A DNA stretch of 64,000 bases, taken from Sminthopsis crassicaudata. Taxonomy: Eukaryota. The translations under genes were made by a program, and so were the position numbers. This document shows positions 17,809-51,651 of this stretch, in pieces (within the stretch, counting starts at the first letter, position 1; every line of letters begins with the position of its first letter). The notes beneath the pieces are model-generated. The model saw nothing but the letters and a program-made list of their open reading frames with translations. It ran no database searches and had not been told where the DNA came from. Location: NCBI RefSeq assembly GCF_048593235.1, contig NC_133617.1, positions 627,482,958 to 627,546,957 of the forward strand, given 5' to 3'.

Positions 17809-18718
17809 AGCGGTCTTTATGTAGCGCCTCCCAAGGTTCCCCCTGCTCCTGGATCTGGAGGAAGCCTCAAGAGGTCTGTAGCACCAGGGACAGGTGGGAG
17901 AGGGCAAGAAGGCCAAATCATGTAGCCTGAAGGAAGAGCCCTAGAGCCCCTCCCCCAGCTTCCCCCAAGTGGGGCCCTCAGCACTGGAGAGGCTGGGCCA
18001 GGTGGTGGTGTGGGCCTGCCCCAAGAGACTAATACAAACCTGGGGAAATAAATGAAATCCCTAAGGGTCTGTAGAGATGCTAGGCTGCCTGTGCAGGAGA
18101 GGAGCTAGCTAGCTCTAAGGGGTAGCCAACCTGACCCCCGGTGAGACACAAAGAGGTTTGGGGTACCTCTCCCACCCAGAGGGATGCATGAGATTAAGAG
18201 CTGCCCTCCCCTAGACTACAGCAGAAGGGGAAGGGAAATAGGCGCGTCCTTGGCAAAAGGGAGAGAGCCCTCCCCTGCTTTACTCCTTGATCCTCTACAA
18301 TTCCTGTTTAGTCCATCCTATCCGAAATTGCTGTGGAATAGGGCGCCTTCCTCTTTAATTTCCCTCTTCTAGGCCCCTTGCAGATTATAGTTGGAAAAAG
18401 GGTATCCCTGGAGTTATATAAGCAGGAGAGTGCCTCCTAATTTCCACTTTTCTAGTCCCTACGCAGAGGAGAATGTTGGCCATTTCAAACCCTCTGTCCC
18501 TAAGTCCCAGGCACCCTGGGGACAAGAGAGGTAGCTGTTTCCTACAAGCCTGGTCCCTGTTCTATCCCTTTATCATCTTACAGGGAGAAGCTTTCCCCCA
18601 ACTTCTCCATCCCTATCCTCAGGCCTAGGACCACTGGAAAGGCCCCTGGTCCCCATCCCTACCCTTCAGTCCTGGAGCCCAATTCCTGGAGGGAATGGGT
18701 GTCCCCACTCCACTCCCC

Positions 18719-23722
<5,004 letters not shown>

Positions 23723-40144: not shown

Positions 40145-42549
40145 ATGGATGTGAGTCACTGACCCCACTCTTGCTCCTTGACCCTACCCTGCTGATTCTC
40201 CCCAATCCTAAATCCTTTGTTCTACAAATCTTGCTGCCCTTAGTCCCCTCTCAATCCCAACCACATTCCTCCTCTTTTGTGTCCCTGAAGCCTCCACACT
40301 CTCTCCCTATCCTCTAGTTACCCCTTCCTCCTTGTACCTATAGTTCACAGAGGCTTCCTCTAGCTCATGGAACTCAGGCCGGGGTCCTCTGGTGAATGTC
40401 TCCTTGCCCATTCCAGCCATTGTCTTCATCAGCGTGGTCGCCTATTTGCTGCTGCTTGGCCTGGTGCTGCTGGCCAGACGTTACCTAGTGGTGAGGAGGC
40501 ACCCAGAGAGGGGAGGGAGGTGTGAATGGCTATACTAGTATAGGGGAAAAGGAAAGAAAGCCTCAGATCCACTTCCCCAGCTCTGGCTTCTCCCCAAATG
40601 CCACATTTTCTTTCTACTGTGATGCACATTCCTCCAGGACCCAAGAATTTCCTTGAAATTTTCCCTCATAATTCTAGCTTCTTGATTATCAACTCCTGTC
40701 CCTTGTAAGAAGCCAGGAAGCTCTCCCAAGGTGCTATATTTCCATTAGACTATAAATTGCTCCATATGGACAAAAGGAAAAGAGTTATGAGGAAAGCTCA
40801 GGAAATCTCTCTGACTCTCAGGAGCAGGACTGTTGCACAGACTGCAGAGGGCCCTGCAGGAAGACAGACACCCATGGTCCCTTTGAGTGTTGCCAGGGCT
40901 GCGCTGAAGCCTGTGACTTCCCTCTACCCAATCCAACCAGATGCTTGGATGCCTGCTGTCCCCAGCCCATGGAAGCAGTGAGTTATTCCCTTTGACTGAG
41001 ATATCCTTGACTATCTTATTCCTCCTTCCAATTATCAATTCCTTCTCATCTTGACATTCAGTCCAATTCACCTAACCTTGCTAAGCCCCCTCTCTGTCAC
41101 AAAGATATGCTTTTAAATATATTTTATTAATATACCTAAGGGAAGGGACAGGTAAGTCACAAATTATTCTGCAGCATATCTCTTTATAGTCATACAGTTT
41201 ACTAACAAGTCAGAAAACACAAGATCCCACTTGTTTTATTTACCAAGAAAAATTTTATTTAAAAGAGCAAACTGCTATCTGAAGGGATTTCTTCCATTCA
41301 TATTTTCCATGCCTATTCAAAATCTCCTAAGATTCTGTGAAAGTTGTAACAACAGAGATAATTTTATTGGACCTTCTGATCATTAATATAAAATAATAGA
41401 GAACATAATTCAGTCGTTCATATTTGCAGACTTTGAATATTACAAAGTCTCCTAAGCAAGAAATATTATCATCCAGAAGAGGTCAGCCTAAGTATATTCA
41501 CAGGAAATAAAAGAGTAACTAACCATTGTTGCCCAGACTATAATATTCAATGCATGGACAACCAAGAGAACAACAATGGAGCAACTGTTCCATTAGTACC
41601 TATCATTCTTAAACTTCAGATAATAGTGACATGGACTTGGAATTGAGCAGGTAAAAGAGGGCAGCCTTGGGGAATTGGGTATTTCTTTTAATGACATCAG
41701 CTTTTCTCCCTGAATCAAAGGTCCAGTTTTTAAAACACTTCCTGTGATGATGTAATTTCCAAAGAAATAAAATGGTGTCATCAAAGGGCAATTAGAGGTA
41801 CATAGTGGGCATGAGTAGGCTGTAACATATTGCTAATTAAGAAAAGTGGCATAAAGAATATCTTCAGAAAGACCTATGACCTGAAAAGAAAGTGAGCCAA
41901 TCTTATAAAGAAGAGCCTGATTGCTTTGTTGGTATCTATGTAATATCAAGAGACTCAGAGAAAGGCTTCAGTCTGATGGAGGATAAACAGGAATATTCAT
42001 AAATGGAATTTGGCTGGCAGTATATATCATTTGAGGACAGACACATTGAGAAGGCCATAGATTTGTTGAAATATCAAAGTATGTCAAAGTATCCCTAAAG
42101 AAAGAGAGGTCTCCAAGAGGAATAAAAAAAATTCACATTTTTAAAAAGTTTTTTCATGGGCAGGTAGTTTTTTTTTTTTTCCATTCTAGAAAACTTGTAC
42201 AGTATTTATTTAGAATTTATATTCATTACCTTTTGCCAAAACTATTTTAGGCAACTTACAAAGTTAATTTATATAGTGTAGCACCTGTCTTTTACTTATG
42301 GCTTGTTCTAGTTCTAAATTTTATATATTATGAAAGCAAGGAAAAAGACAAAGGTGAAATACATGATGATTATCTCACATGAATTTCAAACCAAATTAAA
42401 TCTCTTAAATGTATTTCCCCAGAAATGAGAGTTTTAATCAAGTTGATTAAAACTCAGCACTTAAGTTTTCTACTGACTGATTTCATTCCACATCATTATG
42501 GTTTTATCTTTCTGGGATATTTCTGATCATTGTGCTACTAGCATAAAGA

Positions 42550-42592
<43 letters not shown>

Positions 42593-44888
42593 CACGTGTA
42601 ATGTCTTGTCCTCCTCTGTACTGGGTTGTACAGACATACACACACCAACACTGGAGATAACATGATCTCCTAATGAATATGACACCTAATCCTGAAACTT
42701 CTGATCTTGTAAATGCCATTTTCCTATTTCTGGACTGGGCAGGTCTTGATCAGGCTTTTTAACTGTGACTGATATCTAGTCTTCTTTCTGGCTTTAAACA
42801 TTTGACCTTTTAATTCCATACTCCTCTAGGAGAATTCAGGGTGGGGAGAGGGAAGGGGGGAAGTGCTTCAGTTTTGGCTGGCCTAAATCCAAATATAGTG
42901 CTCTAGAGGGAGAAAAGGAAGAAGTAGAATATTTCCCACATACTGCTCTTTCAGTGACAAATTGTTCCTACTCCTTGGAAGACAGACTCTCTAACCATTA
43001 TCTCTTTCTCTTAGTTGGTAGTTGAGCTTTTTGGCCATTTTTCCAATCCTCTTTTGTGATTCTGAGAGGGGAAATTAGCTGTCTTTAAATGGAGTCAATT
43101 GCATTTACTTCTACATGAGAATCTATTTTAAGACTAGGCATGAAACATTGTTATAGTGATCTTGAACGATATATCAACTTTCATCTCCCCACTATCCTTT
43201 AAAAGCGACATAGCAAAAAGGGCAATAGATTTAGAATCAAAATATGAGTTCCAATCTAGCTCTTAACATTCATTATATCCATTCAACAAATATTAAGTGC
43301 CTATGTGATAGGTACTACATAAGATATCATGCCAGAGGCCAAGAATACAAAGACAAAAAGCAAAGTCCATGATTCTGTGAAATTTATACTCTACTAGGAG
43401 GAAACAATGTGTAAACAGATAAGTATTACATAATGATTTGAGAGAGAGAAAAGGCTTAGGAGAACCAGGAACAATTTCTCAAAGGAGATGGTATATGAAA
43501 TGACCTTTGAAGAAGCTAAAGGGAAACTGGAAAGGATGTGTTCCTGGTATGAAAGCAGTTTGTGCACAGGCTTAAAAGTGGGAAATGGGACACATAGTTT
43601 GAGGAACAAGAAGCTGACCAGTTAAGAGAATGAAGTACATAAAGGAGAGTAATGGCAGACTGGGACCTGGTTGTGAAGGAAACTGCTACCTGAGAAGTTT
43701 CTATTTTACCCTAAAAGGCATAGGGAGGCACTGGAGGAGCGGTGATATTCTCTGACATATGCTTTAGAAAAATAATTTTAAGGATAGCTTAAAAGAGATT
43801 AGACCTGGAATTCAAGTAGAAGGCTGTTGCTGTAGTTACAGTAATAGGTGATGAAGCCTAAAGTAGGATTGTTGACCATATGAGAGAGAGAAAGGAACAA
43901 CTGGGAGGAGAAGGAACATTAACAAGAATTGGCAACTAACTAAAGGGGTTAAAAAAGGAAGAAGTAGGGATGAGTCCCAGCTTACAAACCTGGGTTATTG
44001 GAAGGGTGATTGTATGCTGAACAGAAATGAAGAAGCTTAAGGAAGGGGAAATAAAGAATAATGTTTTTACGATGTTGGAATTTGAAAGGCATAAATCACG
44101 AACAGGAGATGTCAAAGTAGATAGTGATGCTGAACTGAAGCTTAGAAATAAAACAAGGTTTGGAAGTCTTCTATATGGATATGATTATTAAACTGGTGAG
44201 GGTTTAATGAGATCACTGAAGGAGCAGAGAGAGAAAAGTGTCCATAGTTTGGGGGTAGGACACAGGCAATGTTCCAGCAAAAGAGATTTTAAAGGAGTGG
44301 TCAAAGACAACCTGTAGAGAACAGTGCCACTAAAACTATTGAAGAGATAGTATCCAGGAGAAACTGGGTAGCAATGTCACCTGAGGTGAAGGCAAGAAGA
44401 TTGAGATACCTGTGGGATTTGGCAACTTGGAAAAATACATTTTATTTGAATTAAGTTAGAAGCCCAAACTAGAACCAATTGAGAGGTGAATAGGAGGAGG
44501 TAGAAAACCTGATTATAGACTGCTTTTTTTAGGATCAAGGGCAGACATTTATCCTTTCTGAACCTTGTTTCTTTATTCATATAAATCTTTATCCATAAAA
44601 ATGCTTATAATGGCTCACTGAGTTGTGAATAAAGCACTTTGAAAAGTGCTTCTCTAAATGGGAACTATCATATTTTGTTTCCTACAACACTCCTGTAAAC
44701 TCTCTGAACTTCACAACCCTTAGCATTTCCTCTTTTAACTTTTCCTATCATTCCTTTTCATCCTTCTCCCTCAGGGTTGGGCTCCCCAGTGCCCCAGATG
44801 CTTCCCACTGTGTGACTGTGCCTGTGCCTGCCAGCTGCCCGACTGTCAAAGCCTCAATTGCCTTTGCTTTGAAATCAAGCTCAGATGA
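40145..44888 (+). CDS. Uncharacterised 140-aa single-pass membrane protein with a cysteine-rich tail (orthologue of human LOC112694756, upstream of ALDOA); coding exons 40145-40150, 40344-40490, 40822-40977, 44775-44888
   Basis: All-phase-0 GT-AG introns; 423 nt. Translation MD|FTEASSSSWNSGRGPLVNVSLPIPAIVFISVVAYLLLLGLVLLARRYLV|EQDCCTDCRGPCRKTDTHGPFECCQGCAEACDFPLPNPTRCLDACCPQPMEA|GWAPQCPRCFPLCDCACACQLPDCQSLNCLCFEIKLR. Matches the recalled human uncharacterised protein (LPIPAIVF, CAEAC.FPLP, CQLPDCQSLNCLCFEIKLR). The second acceptor could be 40344 or 40353. Confidence 0.88.
41200..42120 (+). mobile_element. Degenerate RTE-like LINE remnant
   Basis: Decayed motifs such as cttcctgtgatg (LPVM) in an RTE-like order; many stops. 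Confidence 0.4.
42551..42589. repeat. (TG)n microsatellite
   Basis: Directly visible. Confidence 0.95.
43290..44520 (-). mobile_element. LINE-2 remnant
   Basis: cattcaacaaatattaagtgcct L2 3' end followed by typical purine-rich reverse L2 sequence. Confidence 0.6.
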
Positions 44889-45427
44889 TGATCGTTTGTT
44901 CACGGTTATGGAACATGACCTTCCAGAGGACCTGTCTACCGCAAGTGCTCAGAAACATTCCCTGAGAGTAGGGTCCCCATCCCATTGGAGCCCCAAATGG
45001 CTTGCCCACCTGTTCCCAAGGGCTATTCATCCTTTTGTCTTCATTGGACCTAAGCAGAGAAGATCCAGACTCTCCTAGCAAGATGCAGAGAGCAGTTACC
45101 CTAGAAGAAGAAATCCCTCTTGAGAGCTGAGGACGGGACCTCAAGCACCTTGGAGAAAATCCATGAGAGGCTAGTTTTCTTGAGTAAATCCTGCTCATCC
45201 TTACCCCTACCAATAGAGAGGAGTGAAGGGACATGACTCAAGTTAGGACTGGTAGTATTCATTTGTCCTCAGAAGAGGCTGAGTTCAGGAAGTTCTGTGC
45301 AGAGTTAAGATTTCAGGGTGACCTTTGTTGTTCAGTCACGTCCCACTCTCCATGACTCTGTGAACAATGCCATTCATGGGCAAAGATACTGGAGTGGTTT
45401 TCCATTTCCTTTTCCAGTGGATTAAGA

Positions 45428-45470
<43 letters not shown>

Positions 45471-45813
45471 TATTTGACCAAGGTCACCCAGTTAGTAAGC
45501 ATCTGAGGCTGGATTTGAATTCAGGACTTACTGCTTTCAGACCCATCATACTATCCAATGAGCCATTCAGCTGCCTCAGGGTGACCTATGTGCGATTTGT
45601 ATTGCTGCATCTGCCAGCTCCCCATTCTCTTAGGAAATATGTATGTGCCTTTCTGTTCCCAACTCTGAAATAAGTACTCATGAATAAGAACTGACACTAT
45701 TGAGTCCAGAGAGAGAATCAAGAGAGGCCTAAGGTTGGGAGAAAGGAGACTTGATACTAACTACTTTATGACTTACTACCGTAGAGATTTCAACCCTGTA
45801 TCTCCTTTGGCAG

Positions 45814-45864
45814 GCAGGGCAGCATCACTGATCACGATAGAAAAGGATGGCAACTCAACTGCTG
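45814..45864 (+). other. ALDOA: Upstream 51-nt ALDOA exon with an in-frame ATG (45847)
   Basis: Acceptor tctcctttggcag, donor CTG|GTGAGT. ATG GCA ACT CAA CTG CTG ends in phase 0, in frame with the ALDOA exon starting at 48937. Confidence 0.6.
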
Positions 45865-46020
45865 GTGAGTGGGATGTGGTTACATATGCCTGCCTTTCTC
45901 TGCCTGCTTTTGCCTTCTATCTGCTGGATCCCTCTCTACCGAGCAGAAGACCTTCTTGGTCACTCCCCCTCCTCTAATTTCTTCCCCTCCCCTGTTCTAA
46001 GCCCTATTCTGGCCCGAATG

Positions 46021-47990: not shown

Positions 47991-48963
47991 CAGGGGAAAT
48001 TCCCATCGGGGTTTGCTATCGCCTTCCACTAATGCCTTCCATCTCATCCTATAGCTTTTCTTAATCGGGAATGACCTTGAACCACCCAAGTTGCAGCTGT
48101 GGTTGGAATGATGCAAAGGAGCAATCTAGAGGGACAGTGCCCCCCCAGGACATGTCTGACTTGCTGCTGCCTCCCTTTTCACTGCCTCTTTTAGCTCCTG
48201 TAGCAGTCAGCTGACTGGGAATGATGGAAGGCAGAGACGTCTTCTAAAATGGAGGCTGGGCTCTTGCCCTTCACAGGGGTCAGCCTAATACCTCTAGTCA
48301 TTCACTATGTTTATTTTTGTGGAAGTATCTCCAAGCTTACTGGGCAGAGCAGCCTGACCTTGAAATGCCCTTGATGGATTGATTTGCAAGGAAAGGATAT
48401 GTGGTATAAAGAAAAGAAACAGGAGTTTAGGGGATTAGGAAACCTGAATTCTAGCTCTGGATTTTGGAGATTGTCAGTTGGGTCGGAGTCTATTTGCTGC
48501 CCCGAAATACGCATTTCACTTTCATCTGAGGTTCTAAGCTTGCTTTCCTTTCTTGAGTTTGTTGCTTTATTAAATGAGAAGATTGAGGCAGACGTTTATT
48601 TAACTGGCCCTTGTGTGCATCTAAGTAAGGTGACCCTAGAGCTGAGGGCCCAAGTTAATTTCCTTTTATTGTAGCCCAGACTTCTCAGTGTTTGTTTTCT
48701 GCTAGAGTAGCCACACCCTGGATTTGGATCTCCACCCTAGGTTTTAGAAAGGTGAAGCAAAAAAACAAAAAACAAAAAAAAAAAAAGGAAAAAGAAAAAT
48801 TAGGGAAGTAGAACTATATAGAGCAGGGGAAAGAGAAGTTGGGTAGCAAGAATGGTCTGATCTTGAATTACATAATAAACAGGATTATGCCATTATTACA
48901 GAAAAGTCTAGTTTATACTTTACTATCTCCACCCAGGAAACTACCAACACAGCCAAGGAAAAC

Positions 48964-51651
<2,688 letters not shown>

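What the first reader, a model, noticed from the sequence alone, without database searches (positions are those of the whole stretch)
40145..44888. Conserved, uncharacterised single-TM microprotein with a 20-cysteine tail hidden upstream of ALDOA
Four all-phase-0 exons encode 140 aa: a short N-terminus with an NVS sequon, a TM helix (IPAIVFISVVAYLLLLGLVLLA) followed by RR (N-out, tail cytosolic by the positive-inside rule), and 20 Cys in the last 89 residues (CC, CxxC and CxCxC clusters), ending CLCFEIKLR. It matches the recalled human LOC112694756 product, whose exons were long treated as the non-coding N exons of ALDOA. An intact frame in a marsupial implies strong purifying selection, and I know of no described function. 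Hypotheses: a heavily S-palmitoylated membrane adaptor (CYSTM/cornifelin-like), or a membrane-tethered metallothionein-like Zn/redox sensor co-transcribed with the glycolytic enzyme.
Basis: partly seen in the sequence, partly recalled or inferred. Interest (0 to 1): 0.82.

Follow-up and report, generated by a model that had tools for sequence, protein, structure and literature searches.

The report
Ancient cysteine-rich membrane microprotein beside ALDOA
A real, spliced and strongly conserved gene for a 140-residue membrane protein with a cysteine-packed tail lies just upstream of the glycolysis gene ALDOA and is transcribed with it; gene catalogues already list it, but I found no paper that says what it does.

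Summary
Four GT-AG, phase-0 exons (ATG 40145 to TGA 44888) encode 140 aa: a short N-terminus, one TM helix, and 20 Cys in the last 89 residues. RNA contigs from four runs show all three junctions. The product is identical to an NCBI model from a dunnart (LOC141563771 isoform X2), and its orthologues are named "LOC112694756 homolog".

It is protein-coding. ML dN/dS is 0.13 (2dlnL 212 against neutrality). The last coding exon gives 0.02-0.07 although synonymous sites are saturated. It occurs in mammals, reptiles, amphibians, coelacanth, lungfish, a ray and teleosts, and also in hemichordates and echinoderms, with the same phase-0 intron positions.

No Pfam family or solved structure matches, and no paper in the library goes beyond gene lists. 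AlphaFold is confident only for the TM helix.

The same RNA contigs run on from exon 4 through a 51-nt exon into the first ALDOA coding exon. In this animal the ORF is therefore the first cistron of an ALDOA distal-promoter transcript. Adjacency to ALDOA holds in the amniote loci checked, but not in a teleost or a hemichordate.

Existence: already annotated. Function: unknown. My best guess is a type III membrane protein whose cytosolic tail binds metal, is S-acylated, or both.

The parts
38988..39069 (+). Alternative non-coding leader exon inside a CpG-rich stretch. Its 3' end is 39069 (donor GT at 39070). Its 5' end is unknown; it reaches at least 38988.
   Evidence: Contigs of X10 and X26 carry 82 and 42 extra letters before 40114. 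Those letters match 39038-39067 uniquely. Sequence read.
40116..40150 (+). Exon holding the start codon (ATG 40145, then GAT). The context has C at -3 and G at +4. This is the first AUG in the observed spliced leader.
   Evidence: In runs X11 and X9 the exon instead continues unspliced upstream of 40000, which points to an alternative leader.
40344..40490 (+). Coding exon 2: N-terminal ectodomain remainder, TM helix and the RR stop-transfer (residues 3-51).
   Evidence: AlphaFold pLDDT is 90-98 over residues ~21-50.
40822..40977 (+). Coding exon 3: first cysteine-rich block (residues 52-103, 11 Cys). It is 156 nt, the same length as in eutherians and the hemichordate.
44775..44888 (+). Coding part of exon 4: the nearly invariant C-terminal module (residues 104-140, 9 Cys) and the TGA stop.
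   Evidence: dN/dS is 0.02-0.07 with saturated dS. Residues 116-140 have the lowest mean column entropy in the 46-sequence alignment.
44889..45169 (+). Non-coding remainder of exon 4, ending at a GC donor (45170-45171).
   Evidence: Joint reported as 45167>45812 with 4 ambiguous letters. Only a +2 shift gives a near-canonical GC..AG intron. No RNA depth lies between 45170 and the repeat at 45379.
45814..45864 (+). 51-nt exon joining the microprotein transcript to ALDOA. Its ATG at 45847 is in frame with the ALDOA start and would add 15 residues.
48937..49075 (+). First common coding exon of ALDOA (ATG 48964). The microprotein contigs end 28 letters into it, about where k-mers start to be shared with the other ALDOA mRNAs (my interpretation).
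   Evidence: A downstream exon matches Pfam Glycolytic at 2e-28.

Best explanation
This is a genuine, translated protein-coding gene. It is the dunnart orthologue of human LOC112694756 and of the fish genes named si:ch211-198p11.6, and it belongs to an unnamed family that predates vertebrates.

Shown here:
- The exons are spliced as predicted.
- The protein sequence is under strong purifying selection while synonymous sites drift freely.
- The TM helix, a juxtamembrane R-x-C-L motif and a C-terminal module (consensus CDCAC.CQ.P[DE]C...NC.CFEIK.R) are kept from echinoderms to mammals, together with the phase-0 intron positions.
- In this animal the ORF is the first AUG-initiated cistron of a transcript that continues into ALDOA.

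Inferred:
- The protein inserts as a type III (N-out, C-in) single-pass membrane protein without a signal peptide.
- The cytosolic tail therefore stays reduced.

Proposed mechanism (about 40% for this exact split): membrane-proximal cysteines, such as the R-x-C-L cysteine, are S-acylated. The invariant distal cysteines (C118, C120, C127, C132, C134 and neighbours), embedded among invariant non-Cys residues, form a fixed metal-thiolate (probably Zn) knot. The conserved TM helix, with invariant P24 and mid-membrane Y36, docks the protein to a membrane partner as a small accessory subunit.

On this transcript ribosomes should translate the microprotein, not ALDOA. Fourteen further AUGs intervene before the ALDOA start. 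The link to ALDOA is therefore shared transcription from the distal promoter in amniotes, not a shared polypeptide or an ancestral operon.
For: Gene reality:
- Exact exon mapping.
- Three splice joints in four RNA runs.
- Identity to NCBI model P0036.

Selection:
- Pairwise dN/dS 0.11-0.35, Fisher p 1e-6 to 1e-11.
- Third-position changes exceed first- and second-position changes about 2- to 6-fold.
- ML omega 0.13, 2dlnL=212, p~5e-48 against omega=1.
- Dunnart-bat exon identity is 0.67-0.82, while flanking intron and post-stop sequence cannot be aligned.

Age:
- The profile search finds tetrapods, coelacanth, lungfish, a ray, sturgeon and teleosts.
- A hemichordate query finds three hemichordates and five echinoderm species.
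- Intron positions and phases are shared with Ptychodera and Larimichthys.

Topology:
- 0-1 K/R in the 15 residues before the TM and 1-4 after it in every orthologue. The N-terminus has almost no positive charge.

Tail as a specific module:
- D117, A119, C120, Q123, P125, C127, C132 and C134 are invariant in 46 sequences.
- The Cys total varies from 17 to 29 with both parities, which argues against an obligate disulfide domain.

Transcript:
- Joints 45169>45814 and 45864>48937 lie in the same contigs as the coding joints.
- First-AUG status and intervening AUGs.

Synteny:
- A TLC-domain gene, the microprotein gene, aldolase and a PPP-type phosphatase in that order in alligator. Aldolase lies directly downstream in echidna, bat, spiny mouse and dolphin loci, and by gene table in opossum and aardvark.
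Against: - No direct evidence of translation was available: no Ribo-seq and no peptides.
- The stop codon lies 281 nt before the next exon junction, so the conjoined mRNA meets the usual rule for nonsense-mediated decay. That could keep protein levels low.
- AlphaFold gives no confident fold for the tail (pLDDT 38-49 even with 46 sequences).
- No metal-binding or acylation family matches. The metal versus acyl assignment therefore rests on conservation pattern alone.
- The dunnart has lost two otherwise near-invariant cysteines: Y49 (C in 37/46) and F113 (C in 44/46).
- Annotated exon-skipping isoforms lack the TM or the first Cys block, so a soluble form may also matter.
- Contigs are assemblies. 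They show the junctions but not full-length molecules.
Confidence: 0.55

Rival explanations
1. The cytosolic tail binds no metal. It is a multiply S-acylated cysteine array that lies flat on the membrane. It would sort the protein to a lipid domain or modulate a channel or transporter, as the lipidated cysteine-rich tails of MDFI and MDFIC do for PIEZO channels.
For: - The predicted tail is cytosolic and membrane-tethered, with CC, CxC and juxtamembrane Cys.
- The total Cys number drifts between 17 and 29, as expected if many sites are redundant.
- The tail has no confident fold.
- A precedent for lipidated Cys-rich auxiliary subunits exists in PMC12266723.
- Weak language-model resemblance to palmitoylated type III viral membrane proteins and to MDFI (noise-level scores).
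Against: - Redundant acylation sites rarely need invariant spacing or invariant non-Cys residues.
- Here D117, A119, Q123, P125, N131, F135 and E136 are fixed for more than 500 My, and exon 4 has dN/dS of 0.02-0.07.
- No Pfam MDFI, CYSTM or PLAC8 hit.
Confidence: 0.3
2. The orientation is the opposite (type II, N-in, C-out). The cysteine-rich tail is then a luminal or extracellular disulfide-knotted domain, perhaps shed as a ligand.
For: - Dense cysteines with conserved spacing are typical of small disulfide-rich ectodomains.
- Automatic annotation names some orthologues after agouti, delta-like or keratin-associated proteins.
Against: - Positive charges lie on the C-terminal side of the TM in every orthologue, and the N-terminal side has virtually none.
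- Cys parity is as often odd as even.
- There are several vicinal CC pairs.
- No EGF, agouti or other ectodomain family is detected.
- The automatic names only reflect Cys content.
Confidence: 0.1
3. The exons are only non-coding leader exons of ALDOA. The ORF is either fortuitous or acts purely as a translational brake (a uORF) whose peptide sequence is irrelevant.
For: - The exons are spliced to ALDOA in every assembled contig.
- The stop codon position predicts NMD.
- A mouse muscle Ribo-seq study lists Aldoa among genes with changing 5'UTR-to-CDS footprint ratios (PMC11413183).
Against: - dN/dS is 0.13 with p~5e-48, and synonymous sites are saturated while the peptide is kept.
- Homologues with the same exon structure exist where no aldolase gene lies within 10 kb, in a teleost and a hemichordate.
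- Sequence just beyond the stop codon evolves like intron.
Confidence: 0.03

Closest known systems
RefSeq 'uncharacterized LOC112694756' (human) and its annotated homologues, including fish genes named si:ch211-198p11.6
   Same: - Same gene. The window's product is letter-for-letter the NCBI dunnart model P0036.
- Orthologues share the TM helix, the C-terminal motif and the exon structure.
- In the amniote loci checked they also share the position directly upstream of ALDOA, with a TLC-domain gene upstream in alligator and in this window.
   Different: Nothing differs in kind. The dunnart has Y49 and F113 where most orthologues have Cys. No function is attached to any member in the searched literature.
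Metallothioneins (Pfam PF00131 and related)
   Same: - Very high Cys density.
- CC, CxC and CxxC spacing.
- No predicted fold without metal.
- Likely a reduced cytosolic environment.
   Different: - This protein is membrane-anchored.
- It contains aromatic residues and has invariant non-Cys positions.
- No Pfam metallothionein hit in 46 members.
- Metal binding is untested.
CYSTM (PF12734) and PLAC8/cornifelin (PF04749) cysteine-rich small proteins
   Same: They are small, cysteine-rich, membrane-associated eukaryotic proteins.
   Different: - By my knowledge CYSTM proteins are tail-anchored, with the Cys stretch at or in a C-terminal TM. Here the TM is N-terminal and the Cys tail follows it.
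- PLAC8 proteins lack a TM.
- No hit to either family. Only noise-level language-model scores of 0.45-0.53.
MDFI/MDFIC/MDFIC2 (I-mfa domain, PF15316): lipidated cysteine-rich auxiliary subunits of PIEZO channels
   Same: They have a cytosolic, very Cys-rich C-terminal region that acts at the membrane through lipidation (PMC12266723, PMC13080014). This is a functional analogy for rival 1.
   Different: - They have no TM helix.
- No detectable sequence relationship (atlas score 0.46).
Conserved proteins encoded as upstream cistrons of polycistronic vertebrate mRNAs (for example the cases surveyed in PMC13303939)
   Same: A conserved ORF lies 5' of, and on the same spliced transcript as, a well-known main CDS.
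   Different: - Here the upstream ORF has its own four coding exons and a separate, much older evolutionary history.
- It is not linked to aldolase outside amniotes in the loci examined.
- ALDOA has other promoters that bypass it.

Membership tests
LOC112694756 / si:ch211-198p11.6 orthologue family (unnamed, no Pfam entry) | Significant full-length sequence similarity | tested here: met
   - phmmer with exon 3 alone: 6 of the 7 hits at E 7e-13 to 6e-11.
- Profile hits at 1e-74 to 1e-9 across vertebrates.
- The product is 100% identical to P0036.
LOC112694756 / si:ch211-198p11.6 orthologue family (unnamed, no Pfam entry) | Architecture: short uncharged N-terminus, one TM helix, a basic stop-transfer, and a Cys-rich tail ending in the C.CFEIK.R-type motif | tested here: met
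LOC112694756 / si:ch211-198p11.6 orthologue family (unnamed, no Pfam entry) | Shared gene structure: a tiny first coding exon, a TM exon, one or more Cys exons and a C-terminal exon, with all introns in phase 0 | tested here: met
   The same layout is found in the window, bat, spiny mouse, dolphin, alligator, Larimichthys and Ptychodera. Ptychodera has one extra 78-nt exon.
LOC112694756 / si:ch211-198p11.6 orthologue family (unnamed, no Pfam entry) | Amniote synteny: directly upstream of ALDOA, downstream of a TLC-domain gene | tested here: met
   - Window: TLC-domain ORFs at 18.7-20.2 kb on the minus strand; aldolase from 48.9 kb.
- Other species.
Metallothionein | Match to a metallothionein profile | tested here: not met
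   No Pfam hit at E<=1 in 46 members or at E<=10 in four members.
Metallothionein | Stoichiometric binding of Zn, Cu or Cd through thiolate clusters | not testable with these tools
   This needs ICP-MS or spectroscopy on purified tail.
CYSTM (PF12734) | Profile match, with the Cys-rich module at a C-terminal TM (tail anchor) | tested here: not met
   No Pfam hit. The TM is N-terminal at residues ~24-46 and the Cys tail follows it.
PLAC8 / cornifelin (PF04749) | Profile match to the PLAC8 domain | tested here: not met
   No Pfam hit.
Keratin-associated / SMCP / LCE proteins (names given by automatic annotation) | Profile match to the corresponding Pfam families | tested here: not met
   No such family appears among the hits at E<=1. 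The names vary from species to species for one orthologue, as expected when naming follows Cys content.
Upstream-cistron (bicistronic) protein genes | ORF and the downstream main CDS lie on one spliced transcript | tested here: met
   Contigs in X10, X11 and X9 run from exon 1 through exon 4 and the 51-nt exon into the ALDOA start exon. Full-length molecules were not seen.
Upstream-cistron (bicistronic) protein genes | Both cistrons are translated from that transcript | not testable with these tools
   No Ribo-seq or proteomics was available. Fourteen AUGs between the two ORFs make ALDOA translation from this isoform doubtful (inference).

The most novel reading that the evidence does not exclude
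The protein founds an undescribed, deuterostome-wide class. It would be a membrane-tethered metal-thiolate module: a fixed Zn or Cu knot on a conserved single TM helix that serves as an accessory or sensor subunit of a membrane machine. In amniotes it would have been captured by the ALDOA distal promoter, so that its dose follows a glycolytic gene. It would then be an overlooked dosage-sensitive gene of the human 16p11.2 BP4-BP5 deletion/duplication interval.
Probability: 0.2. Interest if true: 0.8.

Novelty: already known. Interest (0 to 1): 0.55.

Why it matters
The gene's existence is not new. RefSeq models it in this species and in many others, and clinical papers list human LOC112694756 among the genes of the 16p11.2 BP4-BP5 interval (PMC11354020).

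What this work adds:
- The protein is under very strong selection.
- The family reaches back to the common ancestor of vertebrates, hemichordates and echinoderms, with its intron positions intact.
- It has no Pfam family, no solved relative and no functional paper in the searched library.
- In a marsupial it is made from a transcript that continues into ALDOA.

This makes it a well-defined member of the 'dark' proteome. It is small, ancient, membrane-bound and chemically unusual. In humans it lies inside a copy-number interval linked to autism, obesity and developmental delay, where candidate-gene lists routinely pass over it. Because a teleost orthologue is not next to an aldolase gene, a fish knockout could test its function without touching ALDOA.

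Tried and rejected
- Pfam on exon pieces, whole proteins and all 46 aligned members found nothing meaningful.
- A profile search of PDB sequences gave only chance hits at E~1.
- AlphaFold2 with 12 and then 46 sequences gave a confident TM helix but a tail at pLDDT 35-49. I ran no fold search because matches to such a model are meaningless.
- ESM Atlas features for the whole protein returned its own clusters, then type III viral membrane proteins at 0.67-0.76. For the tail alone, scores were <=0.53 (NB, CYSTM, MDFI, PLAC8). All are leads at noise level.
- Literature searches used the gene names LOC112694756, AC093512.2, ENSG00000285043, Gm57854, LOC103691235 and ch211-198p11.6, plus peptide strings. 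They found only gene lists or nothing. I could not verify from the tools that AC093512.2 is the same gene as LOC112694756.
- Searches for the classical papers on ALDOA leader exons found nothing relevant, so the 'N exon' claim stays untested.
- DNA for the opossum and aardvark loci could not be served. The exact proteins from Petaurus, Mustela and Latimeria were not on record. No marsupial-marsupial dN/dS could therefore be computed.
- Conservation along the TM helix showed no clear helical periodicity, so I make no claim about a single interaction face.
- My first reading of the 51-nt exon as out of frame with ALDOA was a one-base coordinate slip. It was corrected: the exon is in frame.


Full report
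**1. The observation**

- ATG GAT at 40145-40150 is followed by a GT donor.
- Exons 40344-40490, 40822-40977 and 44775-44888 translate without stops to 49, 52 and 37 residues.
- All introns are GT..AG and phase 0, and the total is 140 aa.
- An exact spliced mapping of a database protein onto the window returned the same coordinates.
- Exon 3 has 11 cysteines and exon 4 has 9. The hydrophobic segment is followed by RR.

**2. RNA evidence**

Among public runs holding this DNA, several held about 0.42 of the sampled words of a stretch in which exons 2 and 3 make up 0.46. That is the signature of spliced RNA. I laid four of them (X10, X11, X26, X9) on 40000-45990.
- The runs come from four studies and two organism labels.
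- They gave contigs with the joints 40150>40344, 40490>40822 and 40977>44775. Intron depth was zero apart from stray low-depth pieces inside intron 3 in X26 and X9, and the contigs had 0-1 mismatches.
- Exon 1 begins at 40116 behind an acceptor.
- In X10 and X26 it is preceded by a leader exon ending at 39069, in a CpG-rich stretch.
- In X11 and X9 the leader instead runs unspliced upstream of 40000, towards the masked stretch 39547-39760. I did not look into that stretch.
- One low-depth contig in X26 uses an internal acceptor at 40417. That shifts the frame and is a minor isoform.

**3. The transcript runs into ALDOA**

The same contigs do not end after the stop codon.
- Exon 4 continues to 45169. 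There a GC donor is joined to a 51-nt exon (45814-45864), and that exon is joined to 48937.
- The exon starting at 48937 carries the ALDOA start codon (48964).
- A downstream exon matches the class-I aldolase Pfam family at 2e-28.
- The contigs stop 28 letters into the ALDOA exon. I interpret that as the point where k-mers start to be shared with the other ALDOA mRNAs.
- None of the four runs covers 45170-45378, so I saw no separately terminated microprotein mRNA.

On the spliced leader that is visible, the microprotein ATG is the first AUG (C at -3, G at +4). Fourteen further AUGs lie between it and the ALDOA start codons. By the scanning model, which is an inference, this isoform makes the microprotein rather than aldolase. 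Its stop codon lies 281 nt before the next exon junction, which satisfies the usual rule for nonsense-mediated decay.

The ATG in the 51-nt exon (45847) is in frame with ALDOA and would add 15 residues.

**4. Identity**

phmmer with exon 3 alone against 1.8 billion representatives found seven proteins, all mammal-like. A search with one of them returned 65 proteins.
- One is P0036, an NCBI model from Sminthopsis crassicaudata. It is identical to the window's product over all 140 residues.
- Many are named 'uncharaterized LOC112694756 homolog'.
- Other names (keratin-associated protein, SMCP, late cornified envelope-like, Mst84Db, agouti, delta homolog) change from species to species. They reflect cysteine content only.

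**5. Selection**

I retrieved genomic loci for echidna, alligator, a bat, a spiny mouse and a dolphin. I mapped their exons and built a codon alignment.
- Nei-Gojobori dN/dS is 0.11-0.35 for all 15 pairs.
- Among eutherians dS is 0.29-0.49, which is ordinary neutral divergence, while dN is 0.03-0.07. Fisher tests give p from 9e-7 to 1e-11.
- Third codon positions change about 2-6 times as often as first or second positions.
- For exon 4, dN/dS is 0.02-0.07. Between dunnart and bat, 16.5 of 22.8 synonymous sites differ, against 4.5 of 88 non-synonymous sites.
- A codon model gives omega 0.13, and fixing omega at 1 costs 106 log-likelihood units (2dlnL=212).
- Between dunnart and eutherians only the coding exons can be aligned. 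Introns and the sequence just after the stop cannot.

The conservation is therefore on the peptide, not on a nucleotide element of the ALDOA leader.

**6. Age and range**

A profile of 12 orthologues found turtles, squamates, alligator, axolotl, Bombina, coelacanth, lungfish, a ray, sturgeon, bowfin and many teleosts. The teleost genes are named si:ch211-198p11.6. It also found a hemichordate. Querying with the hemichordate protein then found two more hemichordates and five echinoderm species: sea stars, crinoids and a brittle star. No bird is among the listed hits.

Alignments show a shared core:
- an LP.PA start of the TM helix, with an invariant proline and an invariant mid-membrane tyrosine;
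- a basic residue and R-x-C-L after the helix;
- a cysteine-rich middle;
- a C-terminal module in which D117, A119, C120, Q123, P125, C127, C132 and C134 are invariant in 46 sequences.

The gene structure is shared too. The croaker and Ptychodera genes have the same tiny first coding exon, TM exon, Cys exon and C-terminal exon, with all introns in phase 0. The Cys exon is 156 nt in Ptychodera, as in mammals. Ptychodera has one extra 78-nt exon.

**7. Synteny**

In the window, TLC-domain ORFs lie at 18.7-20.2 kb on the minus strand and ALDOA starts at 48.9 kb.
- The alligator locus has a TLC-domain gene, the microprotein gene, aldolase and a PPP-type phosphatase in that order.
- The echidna, bat, spiny mouse and dolphin loci all have aldolase directly downstream. 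So do the opossum and aardvark loci by gene table.
- In the Larimichthys and Ptychodera loci there is no aldolase within 10 kb, by gene table and by tblastn.

The family is therefore older than its association with ALDOA.

**8. What the protein looks like**

No Pfam family matches any of 46 members, and no PDB chain is related by sequence. AlphaFold2 is confident only for the TM helix: pLDDT 90-98 with the 46-sequence alignment, against 38-49 for the tail.

Across about 70 orthologues the 15 residues before the helix hold 0-1 Lys/Arg and the 15 after it hold 1-4. The N-terminus has no signal-peptide-like segment. This predicts an N-out, C-in (type III) orientation with the tail in the cytosol.

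The number of tail cysteines ranges from 17 to 29, with odd and even counts. '20' is therefore not a family constant, and an all-disulfide domain is unlikely. The NVS sequon of the dunnart is not conserved and sits within a few residues of the helix. The dunnart also lacks two cysteines that nearly all others have (Y49, F113).

**9. Mechanism**

Shown: a spliced, selected, ancient coding gene for a single-pass membrane protein, expressed in the dunnart from an ALDOA-conjoined transcript.

Inferred: type III topology and a reduced cytosolic tail.

Proposed, at about 40%: the membrane-proximal cysteines are S-acylated. The distal, invariant cysteines, set among invariant non-cysteine residues, form a fixed metal-thiolate knot. 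The conserved helix docks to a membrane partner.
- The main rival, at about 30%, is a purely S-acylated tail. Its precedent is the lipidated cysteine-rich MDFI/MDFIC subunits of PIEZO channels (PMC12266723).
- An inverted topology with an extracellular disulfide domain gets about 10%.
- The idea that these are merely non-coding ALDOA leader exons is contradicted by the selection tests and by the homologues that are not linked to aldolase.

**10. Novelty and verdict**

The gene's existence is already known to annotation pipelines and appears in 16p11.2 gene lists (PMC11354020). AC093512.2, which I take from memory to be the Ensembl name for this locus, tracks 16p11.2 copy number in iPSC-derived neurons (PMC8131375). 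I found no paper that studies the protein.

The additions here are the strength of selection, the deuterostome-wide range with conserved introns, the absence of any family assignment, and the RNA-level link to ALDOA in a marsupial. This is a good candidate for functional work, not a new genomic element. Interest is 0.55.

Noticed in passing
window 45814-45864 and 48937-49075: A 51-nt exon with an ATG at 45847 is spliced to the ALDOA start exon and is in frame with it. It predicts an ALDOA isoform with 15 extra N-terminal residues. The joint is RNA-supported in three runs. In these contigs the exon is entered only from microprotein exon 4.
   Followed up: partly
window 45170-45813: The intron between exon 4 and the 51-nt exon can only be phased as a GC..AG intron (donor AG|GCTAGT). 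This is a non-canonical but known class.
   Followed up: partly
window 40150>40417: Run X26 has a low-depth contig that uses an internal acceptor 73 nt into exon 2. This shifts the frame to an early stop at 40486-40488, so it is a minor, probably unproductive isoform.
   Followed up: no
window 39547-39760: A masked or gap stretch of 214 N lies between the CpG-rich leader region and exon 1. Two RNA contigs run 236-281 letters upstream of 40000, which reaches to or into this stretch.
   Followed up: no
window 38936-38968: A short ATG-initiated ORF (10 codons, then TGA) sits in the CpG-rich region upstream of the visible part of the leader exon. In the tammar wallaby model P0034 a similar upstream ATG is annotated as an in-frame N-terminal extension, which is probably an annotation artefact.
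   Followed up: no
window 18625-20234 (- strand): ORFs match the TLC domain (PF03798, E 3e-10 and 5e-7). They are presumably exons of the TLCD3B-like neighbour and fit the 16p11.2-type gene order.
   Followed up: partly
window 42551-42589 and 45379-45467: A (TG)n microsatellite lies in intron 3. Downstream of exon 4 there is a repeat-like segment followed by a 39-nt A run. Short RNA contigs at very high depth (up to 340) hit 45379-45411, as expected for a dispersed repeat expressed elsewhere.
   Followed up: no
proteins P0037, P0040, P0043, P0046 (no TM) and P0044, P0045, P0047-P0049 (no exon 3): Because all introns are phase 0, annotated isoforms that skip the TM exon (91-107 aa, including the only mouse entry seen, Gm57854) or skip the first Cys exon (87 aa) stay in frame. 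A soluble cysteine-rich form may therefore exist.
   Followed up: no
L006 21125-21202 (Ptychodera flava): The hemichordate gene has one additional 78-nt phase-0 exon encoding a further cysteine-rich segment. Echinoderm proteins carry an even longer insert at the same place.
   Followed up: partly
hit lists: No bird protein appears among the listed homologues, although alligator, turtles and squamates do. This could be real loss or the usual gaps in GC-rich avian microchromosome assemblies.
   Followed up: no
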